Both the position numbers and the translations under genes were made by a program. 64,000 nt of DNA from Takakia lepidozioides (taxonomy: Eukaryota > Plantae > Bryophyta), in contig CM060734.1 of the NCBI GenBank assembly GCA_030704615.1, forward strand, positions 5,952,001-6,016,000, written 5' to 3'. The notes under the pieces were generated by a model, which worked only from the letters and a program-made list of their open reading frames with translations, was not told where the DNA came from and did not search any database. Positions 9,920 through 49,100 of the stretch are shown one piece after another; positions within the stretch are counted from its first letter, which is position 1, and every line of letters begins with the position of its first letter.

Positions 9920-11034
9920 TGCAGGGAAGAAAATGCCCAGACTGGGGCAGATGTCAGTGTTGCCAGTGCCAGGGCCTCCACCTCCTCCAAGCGCAGCCGC
10001 ACTAGGCAGCTTCTATCCCCAGCCCTATCCTGAACACCTGCACCAGGGCTCATCTTCTGGACGGATCGCACTACAATGAAGGGCCACCATCGTATCCAAA
10101 CTACCAGCCTCCCCCCAGCCCGACAGGTCAGTACTCATGTTATGCTGGACCAGCAGGGCAGCAGCCAGACAATGCAATGAATGGCCACTACCACGAAGGC
10201 GTGTGGTATCCTGCCATAAATCCGCTGAACCCTGCTTACCGTCCTCCTCCCTAATACTATCCCACAAGTCCCGCAATGCGGCCTGAGGTGCATGGCCAGT
10301 ACCCTGGACAACCAAGTTCCACTCCCAACTCGTCAGCCCAAAGGCCCCTTCATTTCACGGTATCCCGGCTTGGCACGAGTGGCGGTGGACTGAAAGAGCC
10401 TCAGCAAGCGCCTGGGTGGCAAGGCATGTCACCTGTGCAGACGGGCCCTCGCAAAATGGAAGGGGCAGAGGGAAGGGAGGACTCCAATGTGACTCCGGAT
10501 GTAACACCCATGACCACGAAGGAATGAGCTTCTCACCTGAGGAAGGTGAGAAGAGCTGCCAAGAAGGAGATGAAAGCGCAGGCAGCAGAAAATGCAGCAG
10601 CAGGGAGGAAAAAATTCTACATTGAGCTTGATCCCAAAGGCGCTCTAGTGGGCGATACATGCAACGACTGGTTGTGTGCCCTGCGTGGACAATGTCAGCG
10701 TCTTCTTGACTGGTCACTGCCAATTCTCCAAGTGCCAATGGAGAAGATTCTTGAGCTTGGGCAGATTTTGGATCTTGACTGGGAGTATAGCAGGCCAATG
10801 AGTGACAAGGCACTATGGAACCAGGTTGGTGGCATTCTGAAAAACCAGCGATTGAAGTTATACAGGAGGGTGTATAAGCTCGGGAAACCGAAACCCAACC
10901 ATATTGCAGACAAAACTTGGGCACAATTGTGTTCTTTATGGTCTACACCGGAGTGGAAAGCCAGTTCGCAGAATGGTAAAAAAGCGAGGTCGCATGTAAA
11001 GCTACCCAAACAGGTCTGGACGCTCAGGCGTTAG
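9920..11034 (+). mobile_element. CACTA second protein (TNP1/Ptta, Transposase_24-like) remnant
   Basis: Pro/Gln-rich part followed by KPKPNHIADKTWAQLCSLWSTPEWKASSQNGKKARS, typical of Ptta/En-Spm plant transposase. Confidence 0.75.
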
Positions 11035-15137: not shown

Positions 15138-15903
15138 ATGGCCTGGTCATGTGGACTTTGTGACAGTGCTATAAGCTCTTGGTTGAGATAAATAGCGATG
15201 CAAGTGCCAAAGCTCCACCAACCACCTACACCCATAGAATCTGAAAATGTACTTGTGAGACTGTTTGCTGCAAGTTGCAACTTTGAGACCATAGACTCGG
15301 GAAATGAGAAAGCAGAAAAGAAATAAACCTACAACATCAAGGAAGCTCAAAGAGCTTATGGGACAAAAGAAAGCAGAATAATAAAAAGAAAGGTGGTTCC
15401 CCTAACAAGCTCTCGACAAACAGCCATTCATCAAGAGATTCAAACCTGGACCAGTCCAACTGTCGTGCAGGTTTGCATCTGTTTAAGATAACTAAAAGAA
15501 ACCCACGTGCCCTCAACACGATAGTATAATCTGGCATGTTAATGAGAAAGTAATGCTCAATAGCTAGGGTAGAAATGTAGCCATAGAAACAATTTATGAA
15601 ACAAACAAGTAGAGACATCAGAAGCATCTAGTTTTAAAACCTCAATTGATGTCACAGACCTTGAGGGTAGGGGAAGAAACAGAGAGAGAGAGAGAGAGAG
15701 AAAGAAACAAAGAGAGAGAAGAGAGAAAAAGAGAGTACTTATGCCATTCCAACACATGTAGTGTTCATGTGGACTTTATGATATCATAAAGATTTAGGCA
15801 CCTTCAAACTGCCTCAATCCAACTCTTTCTACATACCTCCTTCTGTCATATCCGCACCAGAAAAGCAGATGTGGGGTGTTCCAAATACAATTGGCTAGTC
15901 CAA

Positions 15904-18732: not shown

Positions 18733-20274
18733 TTTAGTGTCTACCTAGCCCATGTTTTTGGGTACCACATGTCAATGGGGGCAGGTTTAGGTAATGAATT
18801 TTCTGCCACTGGCATGTTCCACGTTGGCAAGTTGTGACAAACGAAGGTACATCAACACATGTACATCAAAATGTAGAGTTTTACCTTTTAGTTTATATAT
18901 AAGCTCTGGTGACCGGAAGAAGAGGCCAGTGAAAGAACCCTCAATTCCCAAGGTCATAAAGTAACAATCAGGAAACAATCTTATATCAAACTTTTAGTGT
19001 TTACCCACCCCTTGTTTTGGGTAAAACATGTGTACAAAACCAAAGGGGGCAGGTATTGGGACTTAGGTAATGAAGTCTGGCAGGGGTTTACCACCTGGTA
19101 TTCAGACAAAACATCTACCAACAGCATATCAGAATTGGGTTTTTTTTATGGTGCCTATAAAGAGCAAAGCCATGACCAGGAGAAACAATTTGAGCCAAAG
19201 AAATGGAACTCATTCTTATCATGAGGTATCCAAATCTGACATAAGGCATCGGCTACAAGGGACCGGCAAACAAGAGTAATGTGCATTGACCGGATCATGT
19301 ATAAGGTGTACACGTCTACTCCAGCAAGCTGTCTTACCAAGGCCTAGCTCAAAATTTCAGCATTCAGAAGCCCTATAGATGTTCTGTGCTTATCTCAGGT
19401 ACCTTCAAGGATGCCTTACTCTCCATGCCCAACATATTTTAGCCAACATATTTTTGTTGGAGAAGATCTTACCTTATGAAGGACTTGTTTGCTCCACACC
19501 ATGGTCATGGCGGGAGAGGAGGTCTCATGGCTTTGGCCTTCCCATTGCCTTGGGTTCATCACTTCAATCAGGAACATATTTGATAACCTTTTGTCATGCT
19601 CAGACCAAGGTGTTAGTAAATCAAACATAAAACTGAAAACAGAAGGGAGATTGGTTGATAATGTGTACAAGAACCACCAAGTACACTAGTCTAAATCAGA
19701 GAGGGAAGATACTTATGTCTTGTCGAGACATGGACAAAGACCTGACAAGGTCATTGTAAAATTAACGACAAATCAGCCTCATAACAAGGCATTGTCAACC
19801 ATTCTTCATTCACAAGTCAGCTTTATGACAAATCCCAGACTTCAAAGTCAATGAAGTCTCTGGGTGGGGGGGTGGGAAAAATTAGAGACTCAATTACCAC
19901 TGTTCATAGCAGGAAACCATTGTTCAGCATGCTAAAAAGTGTCATTCATGACATGCCATATCATTCAGTCTCTATTTTTTGGTCAGCTTACATACCAAGG
20001 CATAACCACATCCATATCAGTTTGGCACGGTATCGAGTGTCCTAAAGTAACCAGCTTCTAAAAGAGGCTAAGTTTCCAATGCTTGTACATTCAAGAACAC
20101 TGTCTGGTCATGAAAACAGGTATGCCCTACATTGTAGCATGTTACCAGATCTCTTTAATATCATTGCTCCATTGTCACATCAGTATGCCATAGGGAACAA
20201 GAGATAGTCGCCCCAATGATTGATTGTCCACCATACTAGGTTAAACATAGGAGCCATCAAGATCAAAGGAAAGA
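18733..20274 (+). repeat. Dispersed non-coding repeat B, copy 1, left part
   Basis: 18733-19608 is nearly identical to 26239-27114 (offset 7506). About 19420-20274 matches 63173-64000 inverted. Confidence 0.9.
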
Positions 20275-20690
20275 ACCAAGGCACCGCTCGGGGCTCTCCC
20301 AGCTCCTGCACAACTCCCCACCTCTGCCAACGCCCAAGTGCCAGGACTCTCTCCCACGAATGCCACCACGGTCCCTCTCTGTTAACTAGTTTTATAGAAA
20401 TGTTGTATTAACTTCCATTTTTTCACGGCAAAATGGGTGTAATCCATCCTGGTTTCATCCTCAATTGCCCTTTATTCTCTGGTTTCATGACTCTATGATG
20501 GAATTCCAGCCTCGTTTCATCCTTTTTAAACCCGATTTCATCCTGTTTGAGCTAAATTCAGTAACTAACAACATGTCAGTAATGATAAATGATGACGCGA
20601 TTAGATGTCATCCCTATACTGGATGACTGTCATGGCTTGACGAGAGCTCGTCGCTGCAAACCCTATCACCAAGACAACCAAGAGTTAGTC

Positions 20691-20857
20691 TGAGATGATG
20701 CACATTCTCACTATCTCCCGTTCTCTCATAATGCACATTCTCTCTATCTCACAATCACTCTACACCGAGATGCTTGGAATAGCAGGGCTTTACTTTAGAG
20801 TCCTCACATCATAGCACAAGTACACATCAAATCACTCTGATTCCACTGGATACACAC
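20691..20857. repeat. Short repeat shared with 32672-32839 (probable LTR fragment)
   Basis: TGAGATGAT.CACATTCTCA...CCACTGGATACACAC is present at both sites. Confidence 0.75.
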
Positions 20858-26084: not shown

Positions 26085-27114
26085 GTGACAAGCAAAGGTA
26101 CATCAACACTTACATCATAATGTAGAGTTTTACTTTTAGCTACACATAAGCTCTGGTAATGGAAAGATGAGGCCAATGAAGGGACCTTAACTCCGAAATT
26201 CATGAAGCAACAAACAGGAAATAAACTTTTATCAACCCTTTAGTGTCTACCCAGCCCATGTTTTTGGGTACCACATGTCAATGGGGGCAGGTTTAGGTAA
26301 TGAATTTTCTACCATTGGCATGTTCCACGTTGGCAAGTTGTGACAAACGAAGGTACATCAACACATGTACATCAAAATGTAGAGTTTTACCTTTTAGTTT
26401 ATATATAAGCTCTGGTGACCGGAAGAAGAGGCCAGTGAAAGAACCCTCAATTCCCAAGGTCATAAAGTAACAATCAGGAAACAATCTTATATCAAACTTT
26501 TAGTGTTTACCCACCCCTTGTTTTGGGTAAAACATGTGTACAAAACCAAAGGGGGCAGGTATTGGGACTTAGGTAATGAAGTCTGGCAGGGGTTTACCAC
26601 CTGGTATTCAGACAAAACATCTACCAACAGCATATCAGAATTGGGTTTTTTTTATGGTGCCTATAAAGAGCAAAGCCATGACCAGGAGAAACAATTTGAG
26701 CCAAAGAAATGGAACTCATTCTTATCATGAGGTATCCAAATCTGACATAAGGCATCGGCTACAGGGGACCGGCAAACAAGAGTAATGTGCATTGACCGGA
26801 TCATGTATAAGGTGTACACGTCTACTTCAGCAAGCTGTCGTACCAAGGCCTAGCTCAAAATTTCAGCATTCAGAAGCCCTATAGATGTTCTGTGCTTATC
26901 TCAGGTACCTTCAAGGATGCCTTACTCTCCATGCCCAACATATTTTAGCCAACATATTTTTGTTGGAGAAGATCTTACCTTATGAAGGACTTGTTTGCTC
27001 CACACCATGGTCATGGCGGGAGAGGAGGTCTCATGGCTTTGGCCTTCCCATTGCCTTGGGTTCATCACTTCAATCAGGAACATATTTGATAACCTTTTGT
27101 CATGCTCAGACCAA
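26085..27114 (+). repeat. Dispersed repeat B, copy 2, including diverged ~255-bp internal tandem units
   Basis: 26239-27114 matches 18733-19608. GTGACAA...AAGGTACATCAACAC...TAGTGT.TACCC occurs at about 26085 and again at about 26340. Confidence 0.85.
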
Positions 27115-30468: not shown

Positions 30469-32450
30469 TCATCTACTCTGAATCCAGATTTTGCCAGAGC
30501 CATCCTTCAACTGGCAGGCACGCTTCGCTTCTTTCTCCTTATCTTGAGCATGGTGATCTTTGTATCCCAAGAAAGAGTACAGCCCTTCCCATGGGCTGGT
30601 CATAGAACTCCGTTTACCTGGCCTGAGCATCATGACCAGGGCGTTGGCTGGAAGTTCCTTGTACTCATGCCCTGCCTTGTGTCTCCCCTCATAATCTCTG
30701 GCTTGTTGCCTTTGCCCCCGCCTGACATTCGTTTTCAGCTGTGACTTCAGTTTAGCCAAGAACATAGCCTTCTCATTGATGGCTGCAGACAGAGCCTCCA
30801 CACTGTCATCCTCATTGACTGTTTCTAGTAGCTTGCCAAGTTTGTTGTCAATGCCCCCAGCCTGGGCACTCTGCCCATTAACACCTGATACGGAGAGAAT
30901 TGGGTGGTTGCCTGCACCCCCATTCGATACCCCATTAGTGCCTTGTACAGGTGTACATCCCACTCCAACTCACCTAGGCTGCCTTGCGTGGTGAGACTCT
31001 GCTTAATGGACTTGATTACCCTTTCCACCATGCTGTTGCATTGGGGCTAGTATGGAGCACTATGCTCCCTCTTAATGCCAAGCTTGGCACAGGTGTCAGC
31101 AAATTCTCCTCCCCATTCAGACCCAGTGTCGGTAAGCACTATGGCAGGGCACCCATACATGCATACAATCTCCTCGTCCAAGAATCCGGCTGTCAAAGCT
31201 GAAGAATGATTGGTCACAGGAAGTGCTTCCACCCATTTAGAATAATGGTCTATGGCTACAAGGAGATACTTGTTACCTCTCTTGGTGACAGGCAGTGGAC
31301 CAGTGGTGTCCAACGCCACCCGATAGAAGATGTCTACCACAGGTATGCTGTGAAGCCTTCATGAACCAGAGAGCATCACCCCTTTCACTTTGTTGAGCTG
31401 ACATTGAGGGCATGCTGCCAAAATGCTGCGCACCATCCTTGTTCTGTCATGCCAGAAGTACCGTCTGTATATCTCTTCCTGCGTCCTCTTTTCACCAAAA
31501 TGCCCCATTAACTCATGCACTTCCATTATTATGGATCGGCGGGATTGTGTTGGTGGCACGAGCCTACCCTCGTAGTAAACCTTTCCTTTGTCATATGAGC
31601 ACTTACTGGCTCTCTTTACTGCTCTTCTCTTCTCTGCAAGAGTGAGGTAGTCATGAGCCTCACCAAAAGTTAATATATGCATGGCCTGAACATCTTCCAA
31701 GATATCAGGTTTCATTTCTTCACGTTGCTGCCTCTGCCAGCCTCCCTTGTCATGCAGCTTTTCTGGTACACCCTCCCCATTAGCCATCCTTACCAGATCT
31801 TCTTGTTCCTTACGTGTGGGGTTTATCCACACCCTAGAGCTTCCCACATGGCTCCATGGTGGTGTGGAACAAGGGCTGTGTAGGTAACCCTTACCATAGT
31901 TACAATGTCCACAATGTTTCTGGCTCTGCATTCCCGCTGATTTTGATTCCTCTGAGCTAGAGACAGGGCTATATCCAGATATGCTTGCACCAATTTCCAG
32001 GTTAGCATGACCAAATTCAAACCCTCTTACAGCCTCCAACTGCTCGTCCAGTGGAGCAGACCCTGCCGTTGAAGATGATGCCCTTGAATATTTAGGGATG
32101 CTGCTCCTCTGCTTCTCCTTTCCAGGGCGTTGTTGCTGCTCCACTTGAGATTGCCTTCCCTGCCTTGTTTGCACCACATTGAGGGTTGGCAGCTCTTCCA
32201 TCCACCGAACCTTGCGCTTCCTTACGTCAGCCAACAGTCTCTGGTTGTTGGCTGTCACATCCTGCAGCTCGTGATCGTCCATGTTGCTCTGCTTGCTGAG
32301 TGTACCTGCACCTGTACCTCCCAGATGGCATTCCCCCAAGGCATTTTGCATCCTATCTACATCCTTTTTTGCACCACCATGTTAACCGATGGTTTATGAC
32401 TTAGACAAAATAGGCTTTCAACTCTACAGCCCATTTCCCAAGACATGCAA
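30469..32450 (-). mobile_element. Ty3/gypsy RNase H end plus integrase fragment
   Basis: KWAVELKAY at about 32430; HELMGHFG...CPQCQ (HHCC); RVALDTTGPLP...LVAIDHYSKWVEA; VLTDTGSEW; GMVERVIKSIK. Confidence 0.85.
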
Positions 32451-32839
32451 CAGAGGTTGTCCGATGGTATGCCTTCTGAAACGATTAAAAGTAATCGTTT
32501 GAAAGATAGCTAAACCCCGGTAGTCGTATGAATCACCGTCTCTGCAGGTTGCTTAATCCTATTAATTAAGTCCAACCCTTAGTCTCATCAGCAAAAAAGG
32601 TCTTAGTCGGAAAGGCTGGAGCCTTTTTGTTCATACAGTCATACAGTATTAAAGACAAACAAGATCTATTATGAGATGATACACATTCTCACCATCTCAC
32701 GTTCTCTCATAATGCACATTCTCTCCATCTTACAATCACTCTACACAGAGATACTTGGAATAGCATGGCTTTAGTTCAGAGTTCATCTCATCATAGCATA
32801 AATACACATCGAATCACTCTGAGTCCACTGGATACACAC

Positions 32840-33130
32840 CTCCAAAACCTGGAGTTTGGTGCTTTCTTTCGACTCTCATTGGAAAGCCTCGCCTGCTAGT
32901 ACCCCATCTATTTTGCTTCTGAATTTTTCTCCGGGAACCTCGTGGTTGTTGTGCGCATACATATCGCTACACAACTACATCGCTGTCCAAACTACACCAC
33001 ACATATATGCACAATAAAGTAGTCTGCCACAATGATAGAAAACTAAGAACACAGTGTTCACACAAGAAACATGAAATCCAACACCATCACTCTTTAAAAA
33101 TAGTAGTCAAGCCACAATCGCCCCCCTAGT
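32840..33130 (-). other. Polypurine tract and start of 3' LTR of the DNMT-bearing element
   Basis: Minus strand AGGGGGGCGAT (33117-33127) is followed directly by TGTGGC at 33116. The far LTR boundary is unresolved. Confidence 0.5.
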
Positions 33131-33385
33131 TGGTGGATAGGTCCCTCTAACTCCAGATAGCTACAAGATGTAATAGCCACAGCCGTACTAAGTCCTCTAT
33201 CACTGTCCCTATTGTACTCAAACTCTATAGATCAAGAGGTCGGGTACAAGAGTAGCCCCATCGTTAGTCGTCGTCTTGCAATCTATGAACTTGAGCCAAG
33301 ATTTCGTGTGTTCAAGGTCTCATAGTAGCTTGGCCTTGCATTTCTTGTTGGCCTTCCATGGTTGTATCCACTCCCACTATCCAAT

Positions 33386-33520
33386 GCAATGCGGACATAA
33401 CCAATCCCCATCAGGAACCATCTCGAGAGGTGGAGTCAAGCATCCCATATGCCAACCTCTAGAGCATCGATCACACACCAGCATGGTGGCTGCCCCTTTA
33501 GCAGACCCACACAACATGCA
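33386..33520 (-). pseudogene. PHD finger at the C-terminus of the retrotransposon integrase
   Basis: CMLC...MLVCDRCSRGWHMGCLTPPLEMVPDGDWLCPHC is a complete C4HC3 pattern, in frame with pol. Confidence 0.92.
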
Positions 33521-33652
33521 CCTCAAACTTGCAGATACCACTGCCAGGTTTGGGTCAATCCTGCCATCGGCATTCGGAAGGTGACATGGCGCACAATTAC
33601 GCACATGGTCCTTCCAAGTTATGCCATCCCGACCCTCCAAGATCAAGACGCC

Positions 33653-35630
33653 TCAGGGCAAGACCTCTTGAACCCTCAAAATAACACGTCCTGCAGTCAC
33701 ATCCAAGGTCGTAGGAGCAGTCTGCTGCAGATAGACATAGTCACCAGGGTTGAATCTCCGAACCCCAGGACGATAACCCCCACCACGTATGGTAGCATAC
33801 CTCAACGTATCACAATGTTGTGCAATGACAAGGTTCTCGAAAGCCATGTGCATGACTTTCTTGAACAACTCTGCACGCTGCTCACATGCACGTGCCCACA
33901 CGTCCGGATCGTCAAGGTTAAGAATTGTAGCAGCTTCTCTACGAATGGATGTAGGCAAATCCGGCTCTCGGCCAAAAAGAAGAAAGTATGGTGAGAAAGA
34001 GGCAAGTGATGCTTGCTTGCTGAACCTGTAGCCCATGGCTAACCATGGTAACTGAAGGTCCCAATCTCCTAGGTGTCCCTTCTGCAAGCCATACTTGCGC
34101 AAACCCCTCTTTACTGTCTGAACAACTCTCTCTGCCAAGCCATCGGCCTCAGGATGATCCCGATAAGTGGTGCGGTGGTTTATCAAGGCCTTGTCACACA
34201 AAGCCTGAAACTCCCCCAAGAACTCTCTCCCTTGGTCCGTGAGTACCTCAGCTGGAGCACCGAATCGGCTAAGTACACAATCCAAGAATGCATACGCGGC
34301 TCCCTCACTAGCCTTATCAGGCAATGGAACCAACTCGATCCACTTGGAGAAGTGTTCCACCATCACCAACACGTACTTGTTGTGGCGCATGGTCAGTGGC
34401 AACGGCCCTGCGAAGTCAAGACTCCACCTGTAGCCCAATCCCATGATCGGAAGAGGGTGCAATTGTGGAGTAGGGGCGTTGAATGAAGCACGCACCCTGT
34501 CACACACCATGCACCTAGCCACAAATTGTTGCACCTCTGTGTGCATACCACGCCACCAATACTGCCCCTGCAGTAGACTATGAGTGCGTCGCACCCCAAA
34601 ATACCCCAACTCCTCATGGGCATGCCGCACTAACCGTGCCCGCTGTGTTGGGTGAGGCACAATCCTCACTCGACCATCCTCCCACACTCGGAGCAGGTGT
34701 GTCCCCTCCCACTTGAACCTCTTGGCTCGTTGTAGGATCCAATCCCTCTCCTTGGCAGTCACAGTGGCTGCAGTGTCTCCAGTGCGGAGGTAGTCCAACA
34801 CAACTGAATCCTCATGTATATCTTTGGCGCCACCTTGCTCATTGCTGGCCTTAGGGTCCTCAGACACTTGATCTACAGTCATCCCTGTTGCAGGTCCAAC
34901 CTGGCCTTCCACTGCCAAGATACACAGAAACGCAGATGCATGCCATCCGGGCACCATCTCCTCGTCCGTCTCACCATGCCACCGAGCTCCAGTGTCATCT
35001 TGCTGGCTCGTGCATGGATTGCGACTCAACCCATCTGCATTACGATTGACCAAACCCGGTCGATGCACAACCTGAAAGTCATATTCTTGAAGGATGAGTG
35101 CCCACCGTGCAAGCTTCCCCGTAAGCTTCTCTGACTCCATCAACCACTTGAGTGGCTGGTGATCCGTGACAAGGGTGAAGAGATTGCCGTATAGATAGCA
35201 CCTGAAGTGTGCCACGGCCCACACTGCAGCTAAGCATTCTCCCTCATATGAGCTATACTTAGTCTCGGCAGCATTGTTCGAGCGGCTAGCATAAGCCACT
35301 ACGAACTCTCTTCCCTCATCATCCACCTGTGTGAGCACCGCTCCAAGCCCCAGCATGCTCCAATCCGTATGCAGCTGAAAAGGACGCCCCCTGATAGGTC
35401 GTCTCAAGATGGGCGCCGAGGTCAACCTTGCCTTGAGCTCTTGAAAAGCTTGTTCTTGCTCATCTTCCCACTGCCACTCATGGTCCACCTTGGTCAGTTT
35501 GGTTAGAGCCTTTGCAATGGCACTAAATCCCTTAACAAACCGTCTATAATAGTTTGCTAACCCCATGAAAGCTCGAACTCGGCTCACATCCGTGGGGCGT
35601 GGAATCTGTGCAATGGACTCTACCTTAGTC
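33653..35630 (-). pseudogene. RT connection/RNase H and integrase domains of pol
   Basis: RAFMGLANYYRRFV; FQLHTDWS; YSSYEGECLA; LVTDHQPL; HEELGY..CMVC; WSLDFAGPLP; VLTDQGREF; DGLAERVVQTVK. Confidence 0.95.
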
Positions 35631-35632
35631 TG

Positions 35633-36457
35633 CTATACCCCCAATCCTCCAGGATATATCATGTGACCCAGATACTCAATCTGGTTGTGGAAAAACTTGC
35701 ACTTTCCCGGATGTAACTTCAATCCGTGCACCCTCAAGCGCTCAAATACCCCCTGAAGGTGTCTCTCATGCTCCTCCACCATAGCACTAAAGATGATGAT
35801 GTCATCTATGTAGCACCGAGCAAACTCCACCCCTGCTAGAATCCTGTCCATGACTCTTTGAAACTCTGCCGGAGCGTTCTTAAGCCCAAATGGTAAGAAC
35901 CGCCACTGGTAAAGGCAATCCTTCCCGTACTCATTGATCCCCCAGAATGTTGTCTTCTGCTTATCCGCCTCCTTGATCGGCAACTGGTGATATCCGGATC
36001 GTAAATCCAAAGTGCTAAAGACCTTGGCATGCCCAATGGCATCAAAGATCTCCTCTGGTGTCGGCATAGCATACCTATCGGACTTGGTCTGACGATTTAC
36101 AGGCCGGTAATCACCGCACATACGTCTCTCCGTCCAATTGCCATAGACATCCTTCTGGGCTGGCATCACTGTGGCTGAAGCATACTCTCTCCCAGATAGC
36201 TCCACCAAACCAACCTCCCAAAGGTCCTGAGTTCTCATCTGAATCAAGGACCTCTCCATGTCACTGTATCTATAGGGTCTCCGAAAGATTGGCGTGTCAG
36301 TAGCCAATTCAATGCGAATCTCTTGACCCTTCAGTGCTCCTAAGTCCTTCAAACTGAAGGGAAAGCAGTTCATGTAAGCCCTCAAGAACCGTCGTATATG
36401 TCGTCTCTCTCCTTCGGTGACTATAGGTCCAACATCAGGCTCCCAGTTGTCCTCCAT
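35633..36457 (-). pseudogene. Reverse transcriptase domain (Ty3/gypsy)
   Basis: RMCGDYRPVN; FSTLDLRSGYHQ; LPFGLKNAPAEFQR; YIDDIIIFS; KCKFFHNQIEYLGH. Confidence 0.97.
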
Positions 36458-36824
36458 GACTGCAACCTTGAGTCTAACAGACTTAGAGGTAAAAGACGCG
36501 TCCCGTGGTTGCTATGTTGCAACCTCTTGAGCAGTGACCACTGCCTCCTCTGTCAGTGACAATGTCTCATCCTGCCCCATCATCCCATCCTTGAGGACCT
36601 CCTCAACCCGAGAAAAATCCCCAACCTGATCCATCACCCCCGCCTTGGCTGCCAACTCCTTCTGAACCTCGAGCACCTCCCACGTGTGCCATGGATGCGG
36701 CCTGCACCTCGCAGTCCTCATCTGCTCGCCCCCACTCACTGCTTGTACCGTCTCGGTAGGTAGGGAGACCATGAAGGGAAGTGTACTCCGTACTCTGCGC
36801 TGCTCAGCCATAGCCAAGCTGATA

Positions 36825-37770
36825 ATCCAGGTCAAACAATTGAGATCCATTGCTTGCCCCAACACCTGACGACGTGATGCCTCAGAAAAAGATGGCTCCG
36901 CCGTGGTACCAGTGGTAAAATCCATTGTCTACTCGCGCTCGTCAGCATTGGGCTCCACTAATTGTTGCAACTGGCTATTCCATAAGAGGCCAGGTCCACC
37001 ATCCCGAAAAGCATGGGATCCTGGGAAGCTGAGCAATGTAGGTAATGCTGCTCGTGGTTGACCCACCCTGTTGACCACTGCCAAAGGCGAACGGTCATCG
37101 TGTCTCACACGTTGAGACTGCCTCCCTGTGTCCAAAATGCTATCCACTGTGAGGTGTGTTGGCCGCTGCACCCCATCAAATGCACGCTTGAGCAGTGCGG
37201 GTAGCATCAAGTTAGTCCACCATAGCCATGGACGATGAGCCTATGATCCCACTGCAGCTGCATCCAGCAACACTGCTGACCCAAGCCATGACCGGACTTG
37301 ATGCACACTGGCCATCACCCTGGCCCGAGAATCACCCATCAGTGGCACATTCTCCAAGATGTATGCTGGAGATACAGCTTGATGAAGCTGCAAGTGGCGC
37401 AAAACCCGCACTATCTCCCAAAACAGACCCGTCCTTGAGTCTCGCAATCCATTGCCATGCCCGGCTGATGAATACCCTTGGCAGGGCCAACCTGCCACTA
37501 CCAGATCAATGGAGCCAACCTGCTCCAAATCCTGCGCCCCCAGCAACGAAATGTCTGCTGGCAAGGCTTGTTGATATCCACGAACTGCAGACACTGGCAA
37601 CAAATTAGGGTATTGCTGTATCAACTGAGCAACATGGCGTAGTGAGATGCGTCGTGCAGTCTCATCCCTCTCTACATACAGGTAACGTCGAACTCATATA
37701 CCTGCCTGCAGCACTGCAGCCAATCCAGTGCTGATCCCGCCAAACAAGTCCAGAAGGCATATGCCTTCAT
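36825..37770 (-). pseudogene. DNA (cytosine-5)-methyltransferase domain, DNMT3-like, embedded in pol
   Basis: Motif I LLDLFGGISTG; II RYLYVERD; IV IDLVVAGWPCQGYS; GLRDSRTGLFWE; VI YILENV; VIII AHRPWLWWTNL; IX-X ERE*TMDFTTGTT...SRRQVLGQAMD. Three in-frame stops. Confidence 0.93.
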
Positions 37771-38149
37771 CCGGGTACTGCCACACAAGAGGTGTGGTAT
37801 CCAATGGCGACAACTGAGATGGCCCTGGTGCAATCACCGCACTCTCCTCTTCTCCTGACAGTATGAAGGCCTCTACCCAGGCTTGTTGCACCCGTCTATC
37901 AGCAGCCTGCTGCAAATCCTTGCTCGTACCCCACAATGGAGTGTGAGCAACCATGGCAGGCAACTCCGCCGTACCATGCATGTCATCCTGCTCTGCTGAA
38001 GGTGGCACATCCTCTGCATGGGCATTGCCTTCCAGCAACTCTCCAGGCCAACTAACTGCAGCTGTAAAGGCGGCTAGTGTTGGCATCTTGCCCCGCTGGG
38101 TAGCTGCAATACCCCCAATGAATGTCACAGGGAGCTGTGCACGACGACC

Positions 38150-38580
38150 ATCCCCTAACTGCCATCCAGGCCTGTAGGATGCTGACTCCTCCCAAAAGTC
38201 CAGGGTGAAGCCCATGGGATATAACACTGCCCCACCAATGAGGATATCGTAAGAGACCGCGTCTGTCACAATGGCCTTGGCTCGCATCACTGAGCCATCT
38301 ATAGGATGATCCGGCTGCAGTCTAATGGCCAACTCACGCCGTGTCATGCCCCGAGCCTGCTCTGATCCTCCCAGAGATGTCTGTATCTGGAAATGACAAG
38401 GCTCTATATCCGCCTCCATGAGGCCCAAACCTGCAATAGCAGCTCTGCCCAACATCAGTGGCTGAGCTCCCGAGTCCAACAAGACCCGCAGTGGCCGGTA
38501 CTTCTTGCCTGCCGGTCCACTCAAAGAGAAAATGCCATCCTGGTTGTCTAACAAGACAACTCCAGGTGTCACCATAGTGC
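38150..38580 (-). pseudogene. Aspartic protease domain of pol
   Basis: RVLLDSGAQPLMLG ... SYDILIGGAVLYPMGFTLD. Confidence 0.85.
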
Positions 38581-38858
38581 GCTCAAAGGCTGGCCTAGCT
38601 GGCAGCTCCGTCAACCTGGTAGCTGCAGCTTGCCAAGGCGCAGCCGTGGCAGTCTTGACCCTCAAATCTGAGGATCCCTATGCCGCTACACCTTCCAGTA
38701 ACTCCGCAGAAGATGAAGTGACCTCCCCATTCTCACAGAGTGTTGCTGCTAGTCTGAACACTGCAGCTGGTCTTACCCCCGGCGTCACAATCATGGTTGC
38801 CGAGAACAGTGGGGCTTAACACACAGAGGTGGCTGCCCCCAATAACACACCGGCTGCA

Positions 38859-40725
38859 CTAGCCTGCACTAGCCTTGGTAGCAGGTGTCAGTGATGCACG
38901 TGTAGCTCTTCCCAATGGCATAGTAACCTCTGCCTCGGTAACAATCGGGCGAGAACTAGGTGCCATGGATGGCGTCGACACTGTCTCCGCCAATGTGAAT
39001 GACTGAGGAAGCCTCGCCTGATGGCTTGCCTCCCCACGTTGTGGATCCAACTCCACCTCTGCACCTCGTGGCTCAGGAACTCGTGCTGCTCCTCGAGTCA
39101 CGGCTGCAGCAGACTCCACCTGCTCTAGTGGTAGTGCTACTCCGCACATGAATCCCATGCCTCCCATATCTCCACCCTCAGGAGCAGGAGGTGGACCATC
39201 CCGCCTGGGAGCCGGTACCACCTGAGCTGTAGCCATGACAGCGAGCCTCTGCTCTAGCTGCTGAAGCCGGTTGGCCATGCCTTGGTCAACACCCTGACCT
39301 CCGCGTCCTTAGCCATGTTGAGCTTGCCCTTGGCCTGCACCTCGTGCCCGGCCACCTCGTCCTCTCTTGGCTGGTCCAGCTCGCCCCGGCCACCATTGTT
39401 CCCTTGGAACTGGCCTGGGCGCAACTCAGGATGCAAGTCATAACATTGGGCATCTCCATGCCCATACTTGCCACAATGCCCACACTGCAACTGTGCAGGC
39501 TGTGATTGTGCTGGCCTTTTGCCACTCTCTGGGCAATCTCTCTTGACATGGGGTCCTCCACATGTCCAACATATCATCCCTGGTTGTTGTTGGCTTGCAA
39601 AAGATGCTACTGGCCTCTGCACCTGAGGTCCCCTGTAAGCTCCATGAAATTTGGGTTGGGAAACCTTGCCCCCCTGACCATGCTGTTGGGCAGTCCCTTG
39701 TGCCTGTGGGCTGGCAGCTGCGCCTGGTGCAGGCATGTCTTTGCCAAATCCAATGGTAATAACTCGCTCCTCTACCATGTTGAGCTCAATCCGCTCAGCC
39801 AGCAGAAACACATCTGCTAATGTGGGTTGGGCTGCTTGTAACAGGGTTGCATCCCATACCCTTCTCCTGAGCTCCTTGTCCAAAATTCCATACCATAACT
39901 GGATTGCCTGAGCTTCAGTAACCCCTTGGGTCACACTATCAAGCGCCTCATACGAGTGTACGCCTCTCGTAGGCTCTCACTGGGTTTGCGTTGGAAGTCT
40001 TGCAAACTTCGCAGCTTCTCTGTCCGTACACCTTGGTAGTTCCTCCGCAAATCCTGGAAGAACTCCACCACCGGGTTGAATCTAGGCACATGTGTTGTAG
40101 TCGTGGCGGGAGGAGTAGTAGCACATTTTGAACTGGTACCACCTGAAGAAGTACCGGCACTACTTGTTCCACTACTAGTGCTGGCAGTGAGAAATATTGG
40201 TGCTGATGCAGCTACTGGTCACGTCGTGCCTCGAGTAATGGAGACGTAGTCAGGTGACCAATACATCCTCCACTCCTCAATCTCTGCTTCATGTCCTCGC
40301 CTGAACTCGTGGTAATCGTCCATAGGCGGGCCTTCCAAATGCTGGAACAGTCCCTTCTACGCCATGAATGGGGTGAACAGCTGTGGATTGCGCATCTGCT
40401 ATAAATCACACCAGCTGTCGAACTCCTGGATAAAGTCATCCAGCTCAATTGTGCCCACAGCTCCAGAGTACCTACGAGGCCCCTTGGTAGCTCCATACAT
40501 CTCCTCCATGTCGTCCCACAACAATGGCAAATGAAACTGCACACCTGTTGATGAAGCCTCTGAGTCTGTGTCTGACTTTGCACTAGTTGAGGGTGGAGGT
40601 GAAGGTGGTCTGAACCGAATACCTCGTCTTGTGAACCCACTCTCACTATTACTACCTATAGCCGTACTCCCCTCAAAACCCTTGGGTAACTCCGTGATGA
40701 CACTCACAATGTGCACCTCCCCCAC
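38859..40725 (-). pseudogene. gag with zinc knuckles (frameshifted)
   Basis: LDDFIQEFDSWCD; ILDKELRRRV...VFLLAERIE; CWTCGGPHVKRDC and CGHCGKYGHGDAQC (CCHC). Confidence 0.85.
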
Positions 40726-40759: not shown

Positions 40760-42146
40760 GCAAAAACGTCTCTACGTGCCGAAGGGAGAGATCAGAGATA
40801 GTCTCTTGAGAAAATGCCATGATGGCCCGCTTGCGGGCCACGGCGGAGCCAAGCGCACCGCGGCACTCTTGAAAAAAGAGTATTTCTGGCCCAAACTGAG
40901 GGAGGAGGCCGAGGAGTATGTCAAGACATGCACCACATGCCAACAAAACCGGAGCGAGTACAAAAAGCAAGCGGGACTGTTACAACCCTTGCTGATTCCA
41001 GAGGGGTCTTGGGAAAGTGTCTCGATGGATTTCATGACTGCTATGCTGCTGTCAAAAGGATTCGATGCAATCATGGTGGTGGTGGATAAGTTCAGTAAAA
41101 TGGGCCATTTCATCCCCACCAAGGAGACGGCAACGGCGCAGGAGACGGGGCGACTTTATTTCGCCCACGTCTTCAACCATCATGGATTCCCGAAGGATAT
41201 TGTCTCGGACCGCGATCCAAAGTTTACAAGTAAATTTTGGAGGGCACTTTGGAAGAAAATGGGGACAAGGCTCAAGATGAGCACCGCCTTCCGACCTACG
41301 ACGGACGGCCAAACAGAAAGGGTGAATTCCGTGGTGAAGCAGATCCTGCGGAATTACGTGTCGGCAGACCAATCGGACTGGGTGGAGCACTTGGATGCGG
41401 CAGAGTTCTATTATAATAACACAAAACACTCCGCAACGGGAGTTTCCCCTTTTGTATTGGTCTATGGAAAAGCACCTCTGGTGCCGACATGTTAGGCCGC
41501 CCAAGACGTTGAGGAACCAGCAGCAGCAGCAGTGCCGGAAGAACGCGAGCGTTTGTTGAAACTCGCAAAGTACAACATTGTCAAAGCTAGAAAACGGTAT
41601 GAAAAACAGGCGAATCAAAAGCAGATGGAAGTTAAGTTTGAGGTAGGCACGGAGGTCTGGTTGAACATCAAGAATTTCCGACTACCTCCGGAAGTGAGCC
41701 CGAAATTCGTACCTCCGTATGCGGGATCATTTCGCATCTGGAAGGTTATGAATGAGGATGTGTATGAATTGGAGCTGCCGGCAAACAGCAAGGTGCATCC
41801 GGTATTCCACGTCTCCTTTTTGAAGCCTTACTTCAAAGATAAAACGCGTCCGAATCGACATCAAGTGTTACGTCTGCCACCTGTGCTGTTGGATCATGAA
41901 AATGAACCTGAGTACGAGGTGGAGACAGTGCTTAAGTCGAGGAGGATCAAGAATCGAGAAACGGAGTATCTCGTGAAATGGAAGGGCTATCATCATGTGG
42001 AGGCATCATGGGTGCGTGCCTCAGAAATGGAAACGCATCTGAGGCGGTTGCAGCTTTTGAAGGGCGACCTCAAAAGCGGAAGAAGCGTTGATGGGGACAT
42101 CAACCTTGGATCGTGGGGGAGGAAATGCATGCTTAGCCCGGCTTAG
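40760..42146 (+). mobile_element. Chromovirus (Ty3/gypsy) integrase plus chromodomain, 5'-truncated
   Basis: CHDGPLAGHGG...CTTCQ; WESVSMDF; IVSDRDPKFTSKFW; TDGQTERVN; VHPVFHVSFLKPY; EYEVETVL...YLVKWKGY...SW. Stop at 41493. Confidence 0.93.
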
Positions 42147-46151: not shown

Positions 46152-49100
46152 ATGGAAGAGGACGACCCTGGCACAGGCCCAGTTGCCCATGCCGCAGAGG
46201 TTACAGAAGTGGAGGGGTTGAGGACCAATGGGCGGCATGTTGCTCTTGAGGACGGACTAGTGGATAGGGATGGGGCCTTGGGATTTGGAAACCCAACTGA
46301 GATGAGAAGTGTGTCCTTTGGTTCCATTTCAAGTCCACCCAGGGCTAGTAATGCTGGGGCATTGAACTCTCCAGACACCAAGAGAGAGAAGGTGAAGATA
46401 TTGTTGAAGAGAAAATCTCGGGATGAGGGCTCTAGAGAACTGGAGACGGCATTGAAGAAGCAAAATGTGGTGATCACCTCTGTAGGAAATGCGGAGGCGG
46501 CTTTCACAACGTCCACCACAGCTGCGGCACAGGATATGGCTGCAGTAACATCAACACAAGCTGTGCTCCTGCACACCTCAGAGATGGACATGAAGGATAG
46601 GTATGTGACTGGACTGGCTGTCCTTGCAATCTTAGATGATTAATTCCATACAGGACTGTGCTTTAGTTTCTAGTTCTAGCTGAAGAATATTTCAGTACTG
46701 GAGCCTTACAAAGGTGCAGGAGGATTTTTCAATAATCAATCGCCCGAAAAAAACTATCATTTTGTATGTGGTATGGAAATAGAAAGTCAGCACGCTTTGA
46801 GCTCAAAGATTACCCCTGCTCCACAGGGAAGTCACAGGACCTGTAAGTTAAGAACAGTAGGTGTGTTGTGATAATCCTTCATAATTTGTATTTTCTTAAT
46901 TCAAATTGGTTAATTCTGGTCTACAACACACAGCCAGGTGGCAACCTCTTCTGAGACACCTATTCCAACTGAAGGTCTATCAGGCTTGTCAACCTCTTCT
47001 CCCGCCATTGGTGAATCCACCCTGGAGGCAAGCAAGCCTACAATGAGTGGCCTTGCAAAGAGTTTGCCAAGCTCCCTCACCTTGAGCTCAAATGGTGGTT
47101 TGTTGGTTGAGACTGAGAGCTCTGGAATTGATTCACTCCTTGTCACTCCTGTGAGGATTCATGAAAGGTCAGCTACTGTTGAGCCCATGCAGTTGGAGAG
47201 GGAGGATGTTGATGCTGCTGTGGAGGCAAGCAAAACTGCCACGGATCCAGCAATTTGCTCAAATGTTGGCTCTGAGGTTGAGACACGAGGTGCTGGAGTT
47301 GATGAAGGCATCATCACTACCGTGGAAATTGAGGAATTATTGGCTACAGTTGAGCCCTTGCAGTCGGAAACCAAGGAAGGTGATTCCGCTGTGGAGGCAA
47401 ATGGAGCTGTTGTAAGTGAGGCTTTAGACTTACAGGAGCCAGTAATTGGCTTCGATGCTGGCTTGAAGGTTGAGACTCTGAGCTCTGGAGTCTGCGAATT
47501 TCTTCTCACGGCTATGGACATTGCAGAAATATCAGCTATGGTCGAGCCTATGCAGTTGGAGGCGAAAGAAGTTGAGCTTATTTTGGCGGCCAACAACAAT
47601 GGTGAGAGCGGGCTTTTAAACTCAAGGGAGCCTGCAGTTGTCTCAAGCGTGGGCACAAAGGTTGAGACTATCAGTTCTGGAGCTGATGAATGCATCATGC
47701 CTCCGGCCACAATTGATGAAAGATCAGCTATGGATGATCAGCCTATGCAGTTGGAGGTGAAGCAAGTTGATTCTAGGTTGGAGGCAAGCAGCGCTGTTGT
47801 AAGTGAGCTTCCAAAGGCAGGGGAGCCAGCAATCTCAAGTGTTAGCTCAAAGTTTGAGGGACCGAGTCCTAGAGTTGATGAGTGCATGATGGCCACAGTG
47901 AAAATTGAGGAGACGAAGCAAGTTGATTCTATCCACGAAATAAATGAAGCTGTTGTTGGTGAGCTTTTAGAGCAAGGGGAGCCAGCAGTTGACTCAAGTG
48001 TTGGCTTGAAGGTTGAGACTGTGAGTTCTGGAGGTGATTCCATCATTTCCACTGGGGAAACTGAGGGAAGATCAGCCGTAGTTGAGGGCATGCAGTTGGA
48101 GACGAAGGAAATTTATTCTACTCTGAAGAGAAACAATTCTCTTGCCAGTGAGCTTTTACGCCCAGGGGAGGGAGCAGTCAGGTCAAGTGCTGGCTCGAAG
48201 GTTGAGACTCAGAGTTCAGGACTTCATGAATGTGTCATCACTAATGTGAAACTAGAGGAAAGTTCAACTTCTTTTGAGCCTATGCTCTTGGAGAGAAATG
48301 AGCTAGTGCTGGGCACGTTCAACAGCACTGGTGAATTGCAACAGGGTGCTGAATTTGAAACAATGGTCAAGGTCGACACATTGCATGGTGCAGATTGGCG
48401 GAGTGAGAAGGATTTTGTAGAGCCAGCATTGGAAGTGGCTGCACCAAAGGCAAAAAGGACACCTCTTTCTTTCCGGCCGGTTGATGTGCTCCCCTCTATA
48501 GACGGTTTTGGGTCTGCTGGTGGACCTTCAAATTCTTCGCACCGTCGCCTGTCTGCTTCAATGCCATCAAATTCTTCTGCCACATTTGTTCCGGCAAAGC
48601 GGTCCCCACTTCCTTTTCCTGTGGTGAGGTCCCCGCTGCCTCTCTCTGGGCAAGGTCAGCGTTCGTCTGTTGGAAGCGCTGTTAAAGAAGAGAATGAGTT
48701 GTTTTCTCTCCTCCAGGTGGGGCAAACTGATCAATCAGGGGATGCTATTGGATTATCCTTGGGTCAAGTAAGTGTCTTGCAGCCTCCGCCTGTAGTGTTG
48801 CACTTGACTTCCATCAGAAACCCAAAGATGTGATTAGTTGAACTCCTTATGTAGGGATGGCTGCTGATACTGGTAGATCATTCTGCCAATAATGTCCTAT
48901 GTCCTACCAGCGGGTAAAAGTGTGAGTAGAAGGCTGCTCAAGTTATACGTACTGTATTTGACATAGCCATCTCTTAGATGGTGATGCATCACTAGTTTTC
49001 TTGGCTCTGCTCAAAAGCATTTTTTTTTATCTACACTGTAAGAGCTTAGCATCAAGTATCACTGGAGATCACTGTAAGTTGAAACAACAGTGATTGTCCA

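What the first reader, a model, noticed from the sequence alone, without database searches (positions are those of the whole stretch)
36825..37770. Ty3/gypsy retrotransposon encoding its own DNMT3-like C5-cytosine methyltransferase inside pol
Seen: between the protease (LLDSGA) and RT, in the same frame as all of pol (38665 to 33377), is a full C5-MTase domain with motifs in canonical I-to-X order: LLDLFGGISTG, YVERD, DLVVAGWPCQ (catalytic PC), YILENV, AHRPWLWWTNL, RRQVLGQAMD. Known: these align by eye with DNMT3A (VLSLFDGIATG, DLVIGGSPCN, LFENV, AHRARYFWGNL, RQRLLGRSW) and are not circularly permuted as in plant DRM. From memory, DNMT-bearing retrotransposons were reported in dinoflagellates and a charophyte alga (de Mendoza et al. 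2018); I know of no established description in a land plant. Inference: frame continuity on both sides and flanking linkers indicate an ancestral part of the polyprotein, not a chance insertion. The enzyme could be released by the protease, packaged, and methylate the element's cDNA or integration site.
Basis: partly seen in the sequence, partly recalled or inferred. Interest (0 to 1): 0.95.

Follow-up and report, generated by a model that had tools for sequence, protein, structure and literature searches.

The report
Dead bryophyte Gypsy retrotransposon carrying DNMT3
This is a decayed copy of a plant jumping gene whose family carries its own DNMT3-type DNA methyltransferase and a histone-reading PHD finger; the type was described only from the alga Klebsormidium, and here it proves to be a conserved, abundant family in mosses and liverworts.

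Summary
Window 33377-38665 (minus strand) is one reading frame: protease, C5 cytosine methyltransferase (Pfam PF00145, E 1.9e-14), RT, RNase H, integrase, PHD finger. Gag lies upstream, to about 40704.

This copy is dead. It has three stops inside the methyltransferase, two more in pol, a lost invariant Arg in motif VIII, frame changes in gag, and no recognisable terminal repeats.

The domain belongs to the family and is not a one-off capture. Of 55 nearest RT relatives with enough upstream DNA, 49 carry it. Colinear copies occur in Sphagnum balticum, Marchantia paleacea and M. polymorpha. Closterium and Klebsormidium nitens have the same gag-PR-DNMT-RT order.

A family profile and a predicted structure both match DNMT3A/B/C best. 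Long-term dN/dS of the domain is about 0.1, like RT.

One "stop" (36512-36514, TAG CAA CCA) is ancestral. It is a conserved leaky-stop context between DNMT and RT, so Gag-PR-DNMT would be the main product.

Enzyme activity and biological role are untested.

It is a new member of a known kind (KnitGypsy-Dnmt3, 2018). I found no paper reporting it in land plants. The scan has reported this family before on other DNA of this genome (s1-447641, s1-446136, s1-446192).

The parts
38955..40704 (-). gag remnant with two CCHC zinc knuckles. It is read in three different frames (40704-39874, 39943-39383, 39278-38955), so it is broken by frame changes and stops.
   Evidence: tblastn with the M. polymorpha protein P0321 and the L011 upstream ORF; CCHC motifs seen in the translation
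38297..38497 (-). Aspartic protease core (D-S-G at about 38474-38482)
   Evidence: Pfam Asp_protease_2, weak, E 0.03. Homologous region of intact relatives scores as PF13650/PF13975.
36746..37780 (-). DNMT3-type C5 cytosine methyltransferase domain, a pseudogene. Motifs I to X are in canonical order and the catalytic P-C is present. It holds three private in-frame stops (37694-37696, 37241-37243, 36929-36931), and R-x-R of motif VIII reads R-x-W.
   Evidence: PF00145, E 1.9e-14; family profile against PDB matches DNMT3A/B/C best; fold of nearest intact relative matches DNMT3A/B/C; stops; motif table
36506..36514 (-). Ancestral in-frame stop in a leaky-stop context, TAG CAA CCA (UAG-CAR-YYA type). 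It separates Gag-PR-DNMT from RT-RH-IN-PHD.
   Evidence: It is the only internal stop shared with the 95.6%-identical copy L007. The same position and context occur in L005, L006, L001, L003, L004, L008 and K. nitens L009, and in 53 of 72 metagenome copies.
35657..36124 (-). Reverse transcriptase (YIDD at 35812); one private stop just downstream at 35633-35635
   Evidence: Pfam RVT_1, E 5.5e-32
35081..35386 (-). RNase H
   Evidence: Pfam RT_RNaseH, E 3.2e-36
34160..34651 (-). Integrase (H2C2 zinc finger and catalytic core)
   Evidence: Pfam Integrase_H2C2, E 1.1e-14; rve, E 8.7e-14
33386..33520 (-). C-terminal PHD finger, where chromoviruses carry a chromodomain. A private stop at 33653-33655 separates it from the integrase in this copy. 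The polyprotein stop is at 33377-33379.
   Evidence: Pfam PHD, E 1.2e-11. Nearest solved PHD fingers are CHD4, PHF12, KDM5A/B PHD1, ATXR5 and PHF21A. At 33654 nearly all other copies in the runs read another letter.
32942..33161 (-). 3' non-coding tail with two short motifs conserved with the Sphagnum and metagenome copies (33113-33161 and 32942-32981). This is the probable 3' end of the element.
   Evidence: blastn against the B-A-B repeat regions of L004 and L001
40776..42146 (+). Foreign flank: fragment of a chromovirus (integrase, SH3, chromodomain) on the other strand. It abuts the start of gag, where the element's 5' repeat should be.
   Evidence: Pfam; tblastn
30858..32351 (-). Foreign flank: integrase fragment of another Gypsy element
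   Evidence: tblastn, 33% identity to the element's integrase; Pfam Integrase_H2C2

Best explanation
Window 32.9-40.7 kb (minus strand) is a dead, 5'-interrupted copy of a Ty3/Gypsy retrotransposon family of bryophytes. The family's coding plan is Gag(CCHC)-PR-DNMT3, then a leaky UAG, then RT-RNaseH-IN-PHD. It is a member of the Gypsy-DNMT3 kind first described in Klebsormidium nitens.

Shown:
- The domain order.
- The DNMT3 affinity of the methyltransferase.
- Its presence in nearly all nearest RT relatives.
- Purifying selection on it comparable to that on RT and IN.
- Conservation of the junction stop and its CAR-YYN context.
- The decay of this copy, mostly by C-to-T type transitions.

Inferred:
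- In live copies Gag-PR-DNMT is the abundant product, so the methyltransferase is made in Gag-like amounts. A minority of ribosomes read through to make RT-RH-IN-PHD.
- The DNMT, assembled into particles as part of the Gag-containing precursor and possibly freed by PR, methylates the element's new cDNA or its insertion neighbourhood.
- The PHD finger on the integrase most resembles readers of unmodified H3K4. It would steer integration to non-promoter chromatin.
- Together, writer and reader would let a new copy take on the host's silent-chromatin look instead of disrupting genes.
For: - Domains and frame.
- Colinear PR-DNMT-RT-RH-IN-PHD copies at 50-82% amino-acid identity in Sphagnum balticum (L004), M. 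paleacea (L003), M. polymorpha (L008) and metagenome contigs (L001, L005, L006, L011).
- K. nitens KFL_013780020/L009 has CCHC-PR-DNMT, an in-frame TGA CAA, then RT-RH-IN.
- RT-first test: 49 of 55 nearest RT relatives carry the DNMT upstream.
- DNMT3 type: the family profile scores 86-93 bits against DNMT3A/B/C, 49-56 against DRM, 44 against HhaI. The model of P0236:905-1245 (pLDDT 96.4) has DNMT3A/B/C as its top 50 Foldseek hits.
- Catalytic Cys, ENV and R-x-R are invariant in 36 diverse members.
- dN/dS: 0.10-0.13 for DNMT in deep pairs, against 0.07-0.14 for RT and RH-IN. The family median is 0.51 for DNMT, 0.38 for RT and 0.45 for RH-IN.
- Junction stop. L005 has 2379 codons with this as its only internal stop.
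- Decay: all other stops are private to the window copy or to L007. The window has T/A where the family has C/G about twice as often as the reverse. CpG observed/expected is 0.47.
- Abundance: 60,332 contig pieces at 90% identity or more in one DNA run of the source organism.
Against: - No enzymatic activity has been shown for any Gypsy-DNMT3. The K. nitens domain gave no methylation in yeast, which the authors called inconclusive (PMC5890265).
- About half of the wider family has Glu instead of Pro before the catalytic Cys, which is unusual for active C5 methyltransferases.
- Readthrough is inferred from sequence context only.
- The L001 and L003 contexts depart from the strict YYA. K. nitens uses UGA.
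- This copy has no detectable terminal repeats.
- The PHD specificity rests on which solved fingers are most similar, not on a test.
- The organism is not disclosed, so 'bryophyte' rests on the nearest relatives and on earlier notes of the scan.
Confidence: 0.85

Rival explanations
1. One-off capture: a fragment of a host DNMT3 gene was inserted by chance into this one Gypsy copy and has no meaning for the family.
For: The copy sits in a nest of transposon fragments, where chimeras are common.
Against: The same order and junctions recur in three named bryophyte genomes, in Closterium and in Klebsormidium. They also recur in 49 of 55 loci found through RT alone. The domain is under purifying selection.
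Confidence: 0.02
2. The domain is kept by the family but does not act as a DNA cytosine methyltransferase. It might methylate RNA, or it might serve as a DNA- or SAM-binding or structural module of the Gag-PR precursor.
For: - The K. nitens domain was inactive in yeast (PMC5890265).
- About half of the members have E-C instead of P-C in motif IV.
- The paper says motif X is poorly conserved in the K. nitens members.
- The position at the end of a Gag-containing product suits a nucleic-acid-binding role.
Against: - The catalytic Cys, ENV and R-x-R are invariant across chlorophyte-to-bryophyte members.
- The fold and the best profile matches are to DNA-methylating DNMT3A/B/C, not to DNMT2.
- The bryophyte clade keeps P-C-Q.
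- Human DNMT3B was also inactive in the same yeast assay.
Confidence: 0.25
3. The locus is a host gene derived from the element: a domesticated DNMT3-like gene still in use.
For: Gene models over such copies exist in public annotations: MARPO_0020s0163 and Mapa_000232. Contigs of a run guessed to be RNA cover parts of the family.
Against: - There are three stops inside the domain and an invariant Arg is lost.
- The stops are private to this copy.
- The copy is one of very many.
- The M. polymorpha model needs introns to skip frame breaks in a decayed full-length element.
Confidence: 0.02

Closest known systems
KnitGypsy-Dnmt3 of Klebsormidium nitens (de Mendoza et al. 2018, PMC5890265)
   Same: - Gypsy element with a non-permuted DNMT3-type domain.
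- The same order, Gag(CCHC)-PR-DNMT then RT-RH-IN, with one in-frame stop followed by CAA at the DNMT/RT junction.
- Split direct repeats in the order A-coding-B-A-B, as the paper describes, occur in the Sphagnum and metagenome copies.
   Different: - The host is a land plant, not a charophyte alga.
- The DNMT falls in a separate, well-supported clade; the backbone of the tree is unresolved.
- The stop is UAG, not UGA.
- A C-terminal PHD finger is present here. The paper's text does not mention one, and the K. nitens contig ends before that point.
- This copy shows no terminal repeats.
SymbioDIRS-Dnmt3 and SymbioLINE-Dnmt of Symbiodinium (same paper)
   Same: Retrotransposons that carry a C5 methyltransferase in their coding region. 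There are two domain orders within one group, as seen here between architectures A and B.
   Different: They are DIRS (tyrosine recombinase) and LINE backbones in dinoflagellates. There is no DDE integrase, PHD finger or gag-PR-DNMT unit.
Host DNMT3A/B/C (animals), plant DNMT3 and DRM
   Same: Best profile and fold matches. The spacing between motifs VIII and IX is short, as in DNMT3. DNMT3A pairs its catalytic domain with an ADD reader of unmodified H3K4; here a PHD finger of similar apparent type sits on the same polyprotein (with general knowledge).
   Different: Only about 20% identity. There is no PWWP or ADD domain. The domain is not permuted as in DRM. It is embedded in a retrotransposon polyprotein. 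Many relatives have W-E-C-Q instead of S-P-C.
Chromoviruses (Ty3/Gypsy with a chromodomain after the integrase)
   Same: A Gypsy backbone with a chromatin-reader module fused to the C-terminus of the integrase.
   Different: A true chromovirus fragment lies next to this copy at 40776-42146.
Leaky UAG readthrough of tobamovirus type (UAG-CAR-YYA) and gag-pol readthrough of gammaretroviruses
   Same: An in-frame UAG followed by CAA/CAG and a pyrimidine-rich codon, placed between an abundant upstream product and the polymerase (the motif is from general knowledge).
   Different: The recoding site lies after PR and DNMT, not after gag. Readthrough has not been measured. Several copies have YYC instead of YYA.

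Membership tests
Ty3/Gypsy LTR retrotransposon | Domain order PR-RT-RNaseH-IN in one polyprotein, with gag upstream | tested here: met
   Pfam hits in that order in one frame; gag with CCHC upstream
Ty3/Gypsy LTR retrotransposon | Long terminal direct repeats flanking the coding region | tested here: not met
   No direct repeats flank this copy. The 5' side abuts a foreign chromovirus fragment. Relatives L001 and L004 have split direct repeats in the order A-coding-B-A-B, not plain LTRs.
Gypsy-DNMT3 retrotransposons (KnitGypsy-Dnmt3 kind) | DNMT3-type, non-permuted C5 methyltransferase domain encoded within the Gypsy polyprotein | tested here: met
   same frame as PR and RT
Gypsy-DNMT3 retrotransposons (KnitGypsy-Dnmt3 kind) | Same placement as in the K. 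nitens element (after PR, before RT) | tested here: met
   K. nitens KFL_013780020/L009: CCHC 297-313, PR 598-691, DNMT 833-1150, then RT-RH-IN in the same frame after one stop
Gypsy-DNMT3 retrotransposons (KnitGypsy-Dnmt3 kind) | Common descent of the DNMT domain with the K. nitens elements, to the exclusion of host DNMT3 | tested here: inconclusive
   All element domains group apart from a phage-type outgroup, but the backbone is unresolved. No host DNMT3 or DRM sequences were available to include.
Gypsy-DNMT3 retrotransposons (KnitGypsy-Dnmt3 kind) | [quoted passage not shown] | tested here: met
   Deep pairs 0.10-0.13. The family median of 0.51 includes neutral decay of dead copies.
DNMT3 family of C5 cytosine methyltransferases | Motifs I, IV (P-C), VI (E-N-V), VIII (R-x-R), IX and X in canonical order | tested here: met
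   The order and motifs are present. In this copy R-x-R reads R-x-W and three stops interrupt the domain. The family keeps all of them.
DNMT3 family of C5 cytosine methyltransferases | Closer to DNMT3 than to DNMT1, DNMT2, DRM or bacterial enzymes | tested here: met
   Profile against PDB: DNMT3A/B/C 86-93 bits, DRM 49-56, HhaI 44, DNMT2 30, DNMT1 not listed. Foldseek top 50 are all DNMT3A/B/C. The single broken piece alone ranked HhaI first, weakly.
DNMT3 family of C5 cytosine methyltransferases | SAM-dependent methylation of DNA cytosines | not testable with these tools
   The only published assay of a Gypsy-DNMT3 domain was negative and inconclusive (PMC5890265)
Programmed stop-codon readthrough (UAG-CAR-YYA type) | In-frame stop with a conserved CAR-YYA downstream context, kept across diverged and intact copies | tested here: met
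   - Window, L007 and M. polymorpha: TAG CAA CCA
- L005: TAG CAG TTA
- L006: TAG CAA TCA
- L001: TAG CAA CCC
- Sphagnum: TAA CAA CCC
- K. nitens: TGA CAA TTC
- 53 of 72 metagenome junctions have a stop plus CAA plus a YYN codon

Programmed stop-codon readthrough (UAG-CAR-YYA type) | Measured readthrough giving a fusion product | not testable with these tools
   No protein or reporter data available

The most novel reading that the evidence does not exclude
The DNMT3-PHD Gypsy elements would be one ancient lineage spread across green plants. Architecture A (PR-DNMT-RT) occurs in Klebsormidium, Closterium, mosses and liverworts. A rearranged architecture B (RT-RH-DNMT-IN-PHD) occurs in chlorophytes such as Scenedesmus and Monoraphidium. 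This would replace the published picture of a local acquisition in Klebsormidium. On this reading, live members make Gag-PR-DNMT as their main product through a leaky stop, and use writer plus H3K4me0-type reader to methylate and hide their own new insertions. Model bryophytes such as Marchantia polymorpha hold copies, so the idea is testable there.
Probability: 0.3. Interest if true: 0.7.

Novelty: new member of a known kind. Interest (0 to 1): 0.5.

Why it matters
Cytosine methylation is the host's main weapon against transposons, so a transposon family that carries its own de novo methyltransferase is a paradox. It has been documented in very few lineages.

This work shows that the Klebsormidium type is also a conserved, selected and very abundant family in bryophytes. 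Genetically tractable models such as Marchantia polymorpha hold copies. That moves the question of what the enzyme is for into organisms where it can be tested.

Three observations give concrete, testable hypotheses about how the element makes and uses the enzyme:
- the conserved leaky stop, which places the enzyme in the Gag-level product;
- the PHD finger on the integrase;
- a second domain order in chlorophyte relatives.

Public bryophyte annotations contain "hypothetical protein" gene models that are really decayed copies of this element (MARPO_0020s0163, Mapa_000232). This matters when counting host DNMT genes.

Tried and rejected
- **Terminal repeats in the window.** Four repeat searches and a blastn with word size 7 found none for this copy.
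- **Naming the organism.** The Rfam scan was empty. An exact look-up of a window ORF found nothing. Run and organism names are coded. I therefore do not name the species. "Bryophyte" rests on the nearest relatives and on earlier notes of the scan.
- **Single-sequence PDB search.** With the broken 150-residue piece, M.HhaI ranked weakly first. I rejected this as a guide after the family profile and the fold search both put DNMT3 first.
- **ESM Atlas look-up of the RT piece.** It gave only generic RT clusters.
- **Search for a Klebsormidium relative among long polyproteins.** The first search found none. It appeared only with a shorter query range.
- **Copia-type and phage-type methyltransferases as outgroups.** They gave very long branches and did not resolve the backbone. 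Architecture B is one group at 98-99 SH-aLRT in the quick trees, but only 80/63 in the careful tree.
- **Expression.** Contigs of a run only guessed to be RNA cover parts of the family at 95-97% identity. I do not count this as evidence of transcription.
- **One-off capture and domesticated host gene.** Both were considered and rejected (see rivals).

Full report
**1. The observation**

Pfam on the seven stop-free pieces gives:
- a weak aspartic protease
- PF00145 DNA_methylase (E 1.9e-14, on 37244-37693)
- RVT_1
- RT_RNaseH
- Integrase_H2C2 and rve
- a PHD finger at 33386-33520

Intact relatives align to 38611-33386 in a single frame. The frame continuity on both sides of the methyltransferase is therefore real. 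Gag, with two CCHC knuckles, lies upstream to about 40704.

**2. State of this copy**

- The frame holds six internal stops. Three lie inside the methyltransferase domain, one after RT, one between integrase and PHD, and one between DNMT and RT.
- Motif VIII reads R-x-W where the family has an invariant R-x-R.
- Gag is read in three different frames.
- No terminal repeats can be found.
- The 5' side abuts a chromovirus fragment on the other strand at 40776-42146. The 3' side is followed by another Gypsy integrase fragment.

A second copy, on a Logan contig of run SRR327418 (L007, coded organism B), is 95.6% identical over 4.7 kb. All stops except the one at codon 718 and the terminal one are private to one copy or the other. 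They are therefore decay, and most are of the C-to-T or G-to-A kind.

Reads point the same way:
- In a DNA run of the source organism, 60,332 contig pieces match at 90% identity or more.
- The window carries T or A where the family carries C or G about twice as often as the reverse.
- CpG observed/expected in the element is 0.47. Two uninterrupted metagenome relatives have 0.69-0.77.

The copy is a methylation-worn relic of a very abundant family.

**3. Part of the family, not a chance capture**

A HMMER search of 1.84 billion representatives with the 150-residue piece gave 2639 hits. Many are long polyproteins.

Colinear PR-DNMT-RT-RH-IN-PHD copies lie in:
- Sphagnum balticum (GCA_965153435.1, L004)
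- Marchantia paleacea (GCA_014180765.2, L003; truncated after RT by another element)
- M. polymorpha (GCA_003032435.1, L008, gene model MARPO_0020s0163)
- metagenome contigs

Identity to the window is 45-82% in amino acids.

As an unbiased test I searched JGI metagenome contigs with the RT piece alone. Of 55 nearest RT relatives (53-77% identity) with at least 1.6 kb of upstream DNA, 49 have the methyltransferase within 2.5 kb upstream. One more has it further away.

**4. What kind of methyltransferase**

The broken piece alone ranks M.HhaI weakly first in PDB. A profile of 23 family domains scores:

| PDB family | bits |
|---|---|
| DNMT3A/B/C | 86-93 |
| DRM | 49-56 |
| HhaI | 44 |
| DNMT2 | 30 |

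An AlphaFold model of the nearest uninterrupted relative (P0236:905-1245, mean pLDDT 96.4) has DNMT3A/B/C as all of its top 50 Foldseek matches, with a target-normalised TM-score near 0.8.

The catalytic Cys, E-N-V and R-x-R are invariant in 36 members from chlorophytes to bryophytes. About half of the wider family has Glu instead of Pro before the Cys. The bryophyte clade keeps P-C-Q.

**5. Selection**

- In deep comparisons (window against Sphagnum, Marchantia and metagenome copies) the DNMT has dN/dS of 0.10-0.13, with dS near saturation. RT and RH-IN have 0.07-0.14.
- Over all family pairs with dS between 0.1 and 1.5, the medians are 0.51 (DNMT), 0.38 (RT), 0.45 (RH-IN) and 0.78 (PR plus linker). 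These values are inflated by neutral decay of dead copies.
- Window against L007 gives 0.46 for DNMT and 0.45 overall.

The domain has been constrained about as strongly as the core enzymes.

**6. The stop between DNMT and RT is a feature**

It is the only internal stop shared with L007. The same position carries:

| Copy | Junction |
|---|---|
| M. polymorpha | TAG CAA CCA |
| M. paleacea | TAG CAA ACC |
| L001 | TAG CAA CCC |
| Sphagnum | TAA CAA CCC |
| L005 | TAG CAG TTA |
| L006 | TAG CAA TCA |
| K. nitens | TGA CAA TTC |

- L005 has 2379 codons with this as its only internal stop. In L006 it is the only stop in 2675 codons, up to the end of the contig.
- Of 72 metagenome junctions, 53 have a stop followed by CAA and a pyrimidine-rich codon.
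- L011 has just one stop besides this one in 6.5 kb.

The context is that of the tobamovirus-type leaky stop, UAG-CAR-YYA (general knowledge). The coding plan is therefore Gag-PR-DNMT, with RT-RH-IN-PHD reached by readthrough. Readthrough itself has not been measured.

**7. Wider relatives**

Two domain orders exist:
- **A:** gag-PR-DNMT-RT-RH-IN(-PHD). Found in the window, the bryophytes, Closterium spp. and K. nitens.
- **B:** RT-RH-DNMT-IN-PHD. Found in Scenedesmus sp. PABB004 "pol" KAF8056149.1, Monoraphidium MNEG_11595 and many metagenome proteins.

In DNMT trees the bryophyte copies form a clade with 100/100 support, and the window pairs with L007 at 99/91. The uninterrupted L005 and L006 are their nearest neighbours (92/98). 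K. nitens sits in another well-supported clade, and the backbone is unresolved. Architecture B is one group at 98-99 SH-aLRT in the quick trees, but only 80/63 in the careful tree. No host DNMT3 sequences could be included, so a single origin is not shown.

The K. nitens contig DF238327.1 has the same gag-PR-DNMT, stop, RT-RH-IN plan. The Sphagnum and L001 copies have the A-coding-B-A-B split repeats that the 2018 paper describes for KnitGypsy-Dnmt3 (PMC5890265).

**8. The PHD finger**

It is most similar to CHD4, PHF12, KDM5A/B PHD1, ATXR5, PHF21A, DPF3, AIRE and UHRF1 fingers. By general knowledge these mostly read the unmodified H3 tail. This is a resemblance, not a test.

**9. How it most likely works**

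Shown: the coding plan, DNMT3 ancestry, selection, and the conserved stop context.

Inferred:
- Gag-PR-DNMT is the main product, so the enzyme is made in Gag-like amounts and enters particles with Gag.
- It methylates new cDNA or the neighbourhood of the insertion.
- The PHD finger guides the integrase to non-promoter chromatin.

Against: the only assay of a Gypsy-DNMT3 domain (K. nitens, in yeast) was negative. The authors called that inconclusive, because human DNMT3B was negative too.

**10. Novelty**

- The 2018 survey of land plants covered Physcomitrella, Selaginella and angiosperms, and reported the elements only in K. nitens.
- Later papers cite "streptophytes (Gypsy-DNMT3)" with reference to that work.
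- Searches for liverwort, moss, Marchantia and the gene identifiers found no description in a land plant. The library is incomplete.
- The scan itself has reported this family on other DNA of the same genome.

I file it as a new member of a known kind, with the leaky stop, the PHD finger and the chlorophyte architecture as added detail.

**11. Limits**

- The organism is undisclosed.
- Transcription is not shown.
Broken copies were read with X at each break, for alignment only.

Noticed in passing
window 18733-19032 and 26239-26538: Two direct repeats of at least 300 nt, 99% identical and 7506 nt apart. This looks like a young LTR retrotransposon of another family. A 131-nt piece inside it (20671-20801) recurs at 32652-32782, just beyond the DNMT element's 3' end.
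   Followed up: no
window 46938-48833 (+): A 631-codon ORF with no Pfam match. It holds four or five diverged repeats of about 190 nt (47165-48221).
   Followed up: no
window 56463-58891: A cluster of direct repeats, 84-94% identical, spaced about 1376 and 417-441 nt apart. Nature unknown.
   Followed up: no
proteins P0030, P0047 (Scenedesmus KAF8056149.1), P0277 (Monoraphidium MNEG_11595) and about 75 others: Relatives with a second domain order, RT-RNaseH-DNMT-IN-PHD. They occur in chlorophyte green algae and many metagenomes.
   Followed up: partly
proteins P0077 and P0136: The same kind of DNMT domain joined to a Copia-type RT (Pfam RVT_2). P0077 nests among Closterium Gypsy-DNMT sequences in the tree. 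That suggests either exchange of the domain between superfamilies or a chimeric gene model.
   Followed up: no
family alignment, motif IV: About half of the family reads W-E-C-Q where C5 methyltransferases normally have P-C-Q. The bryophyte clade, K. nitens and some architecture-B members keep the Pro.
   Followed up: partly
L008 (M. polymorpha KZ772692.1) 10164-12111: The decayed M. polymorpha copy contains an internal duplication of about 1 kb covering the C-terminal two thirds of the DNMT domain. The public gene model MARPO_0020s0163 spans it with predicted introns.
   Followed up: partly
L004 (Sphagnum balticum OZ233180.1) 15668-18261: A second, much more distant PR-DNMT-RT element (27-41% identity) lies 2.6 kb from the first. 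At least two lineages of the kind therefore coexist in one moss genome.
   Followed up: no
L001 3721-4060, 12923-13458; L004 4590-4889, 13230-13799: Split direct repeats in the order A-coding-B-A-B around the bryophyte-type elements. This is the DIRS-like repeat layout reported for the Klebsormidium element.
   Followed up: partly
L011 (JGI Ga0209208_10023449): A nearly uninterrupted copy, 76% identical to the window in RT. It has only one stop besides the junction stop in 6.5 kb, which hints that the family was active recently in the source of those metagenomes.
   Followed up: partly
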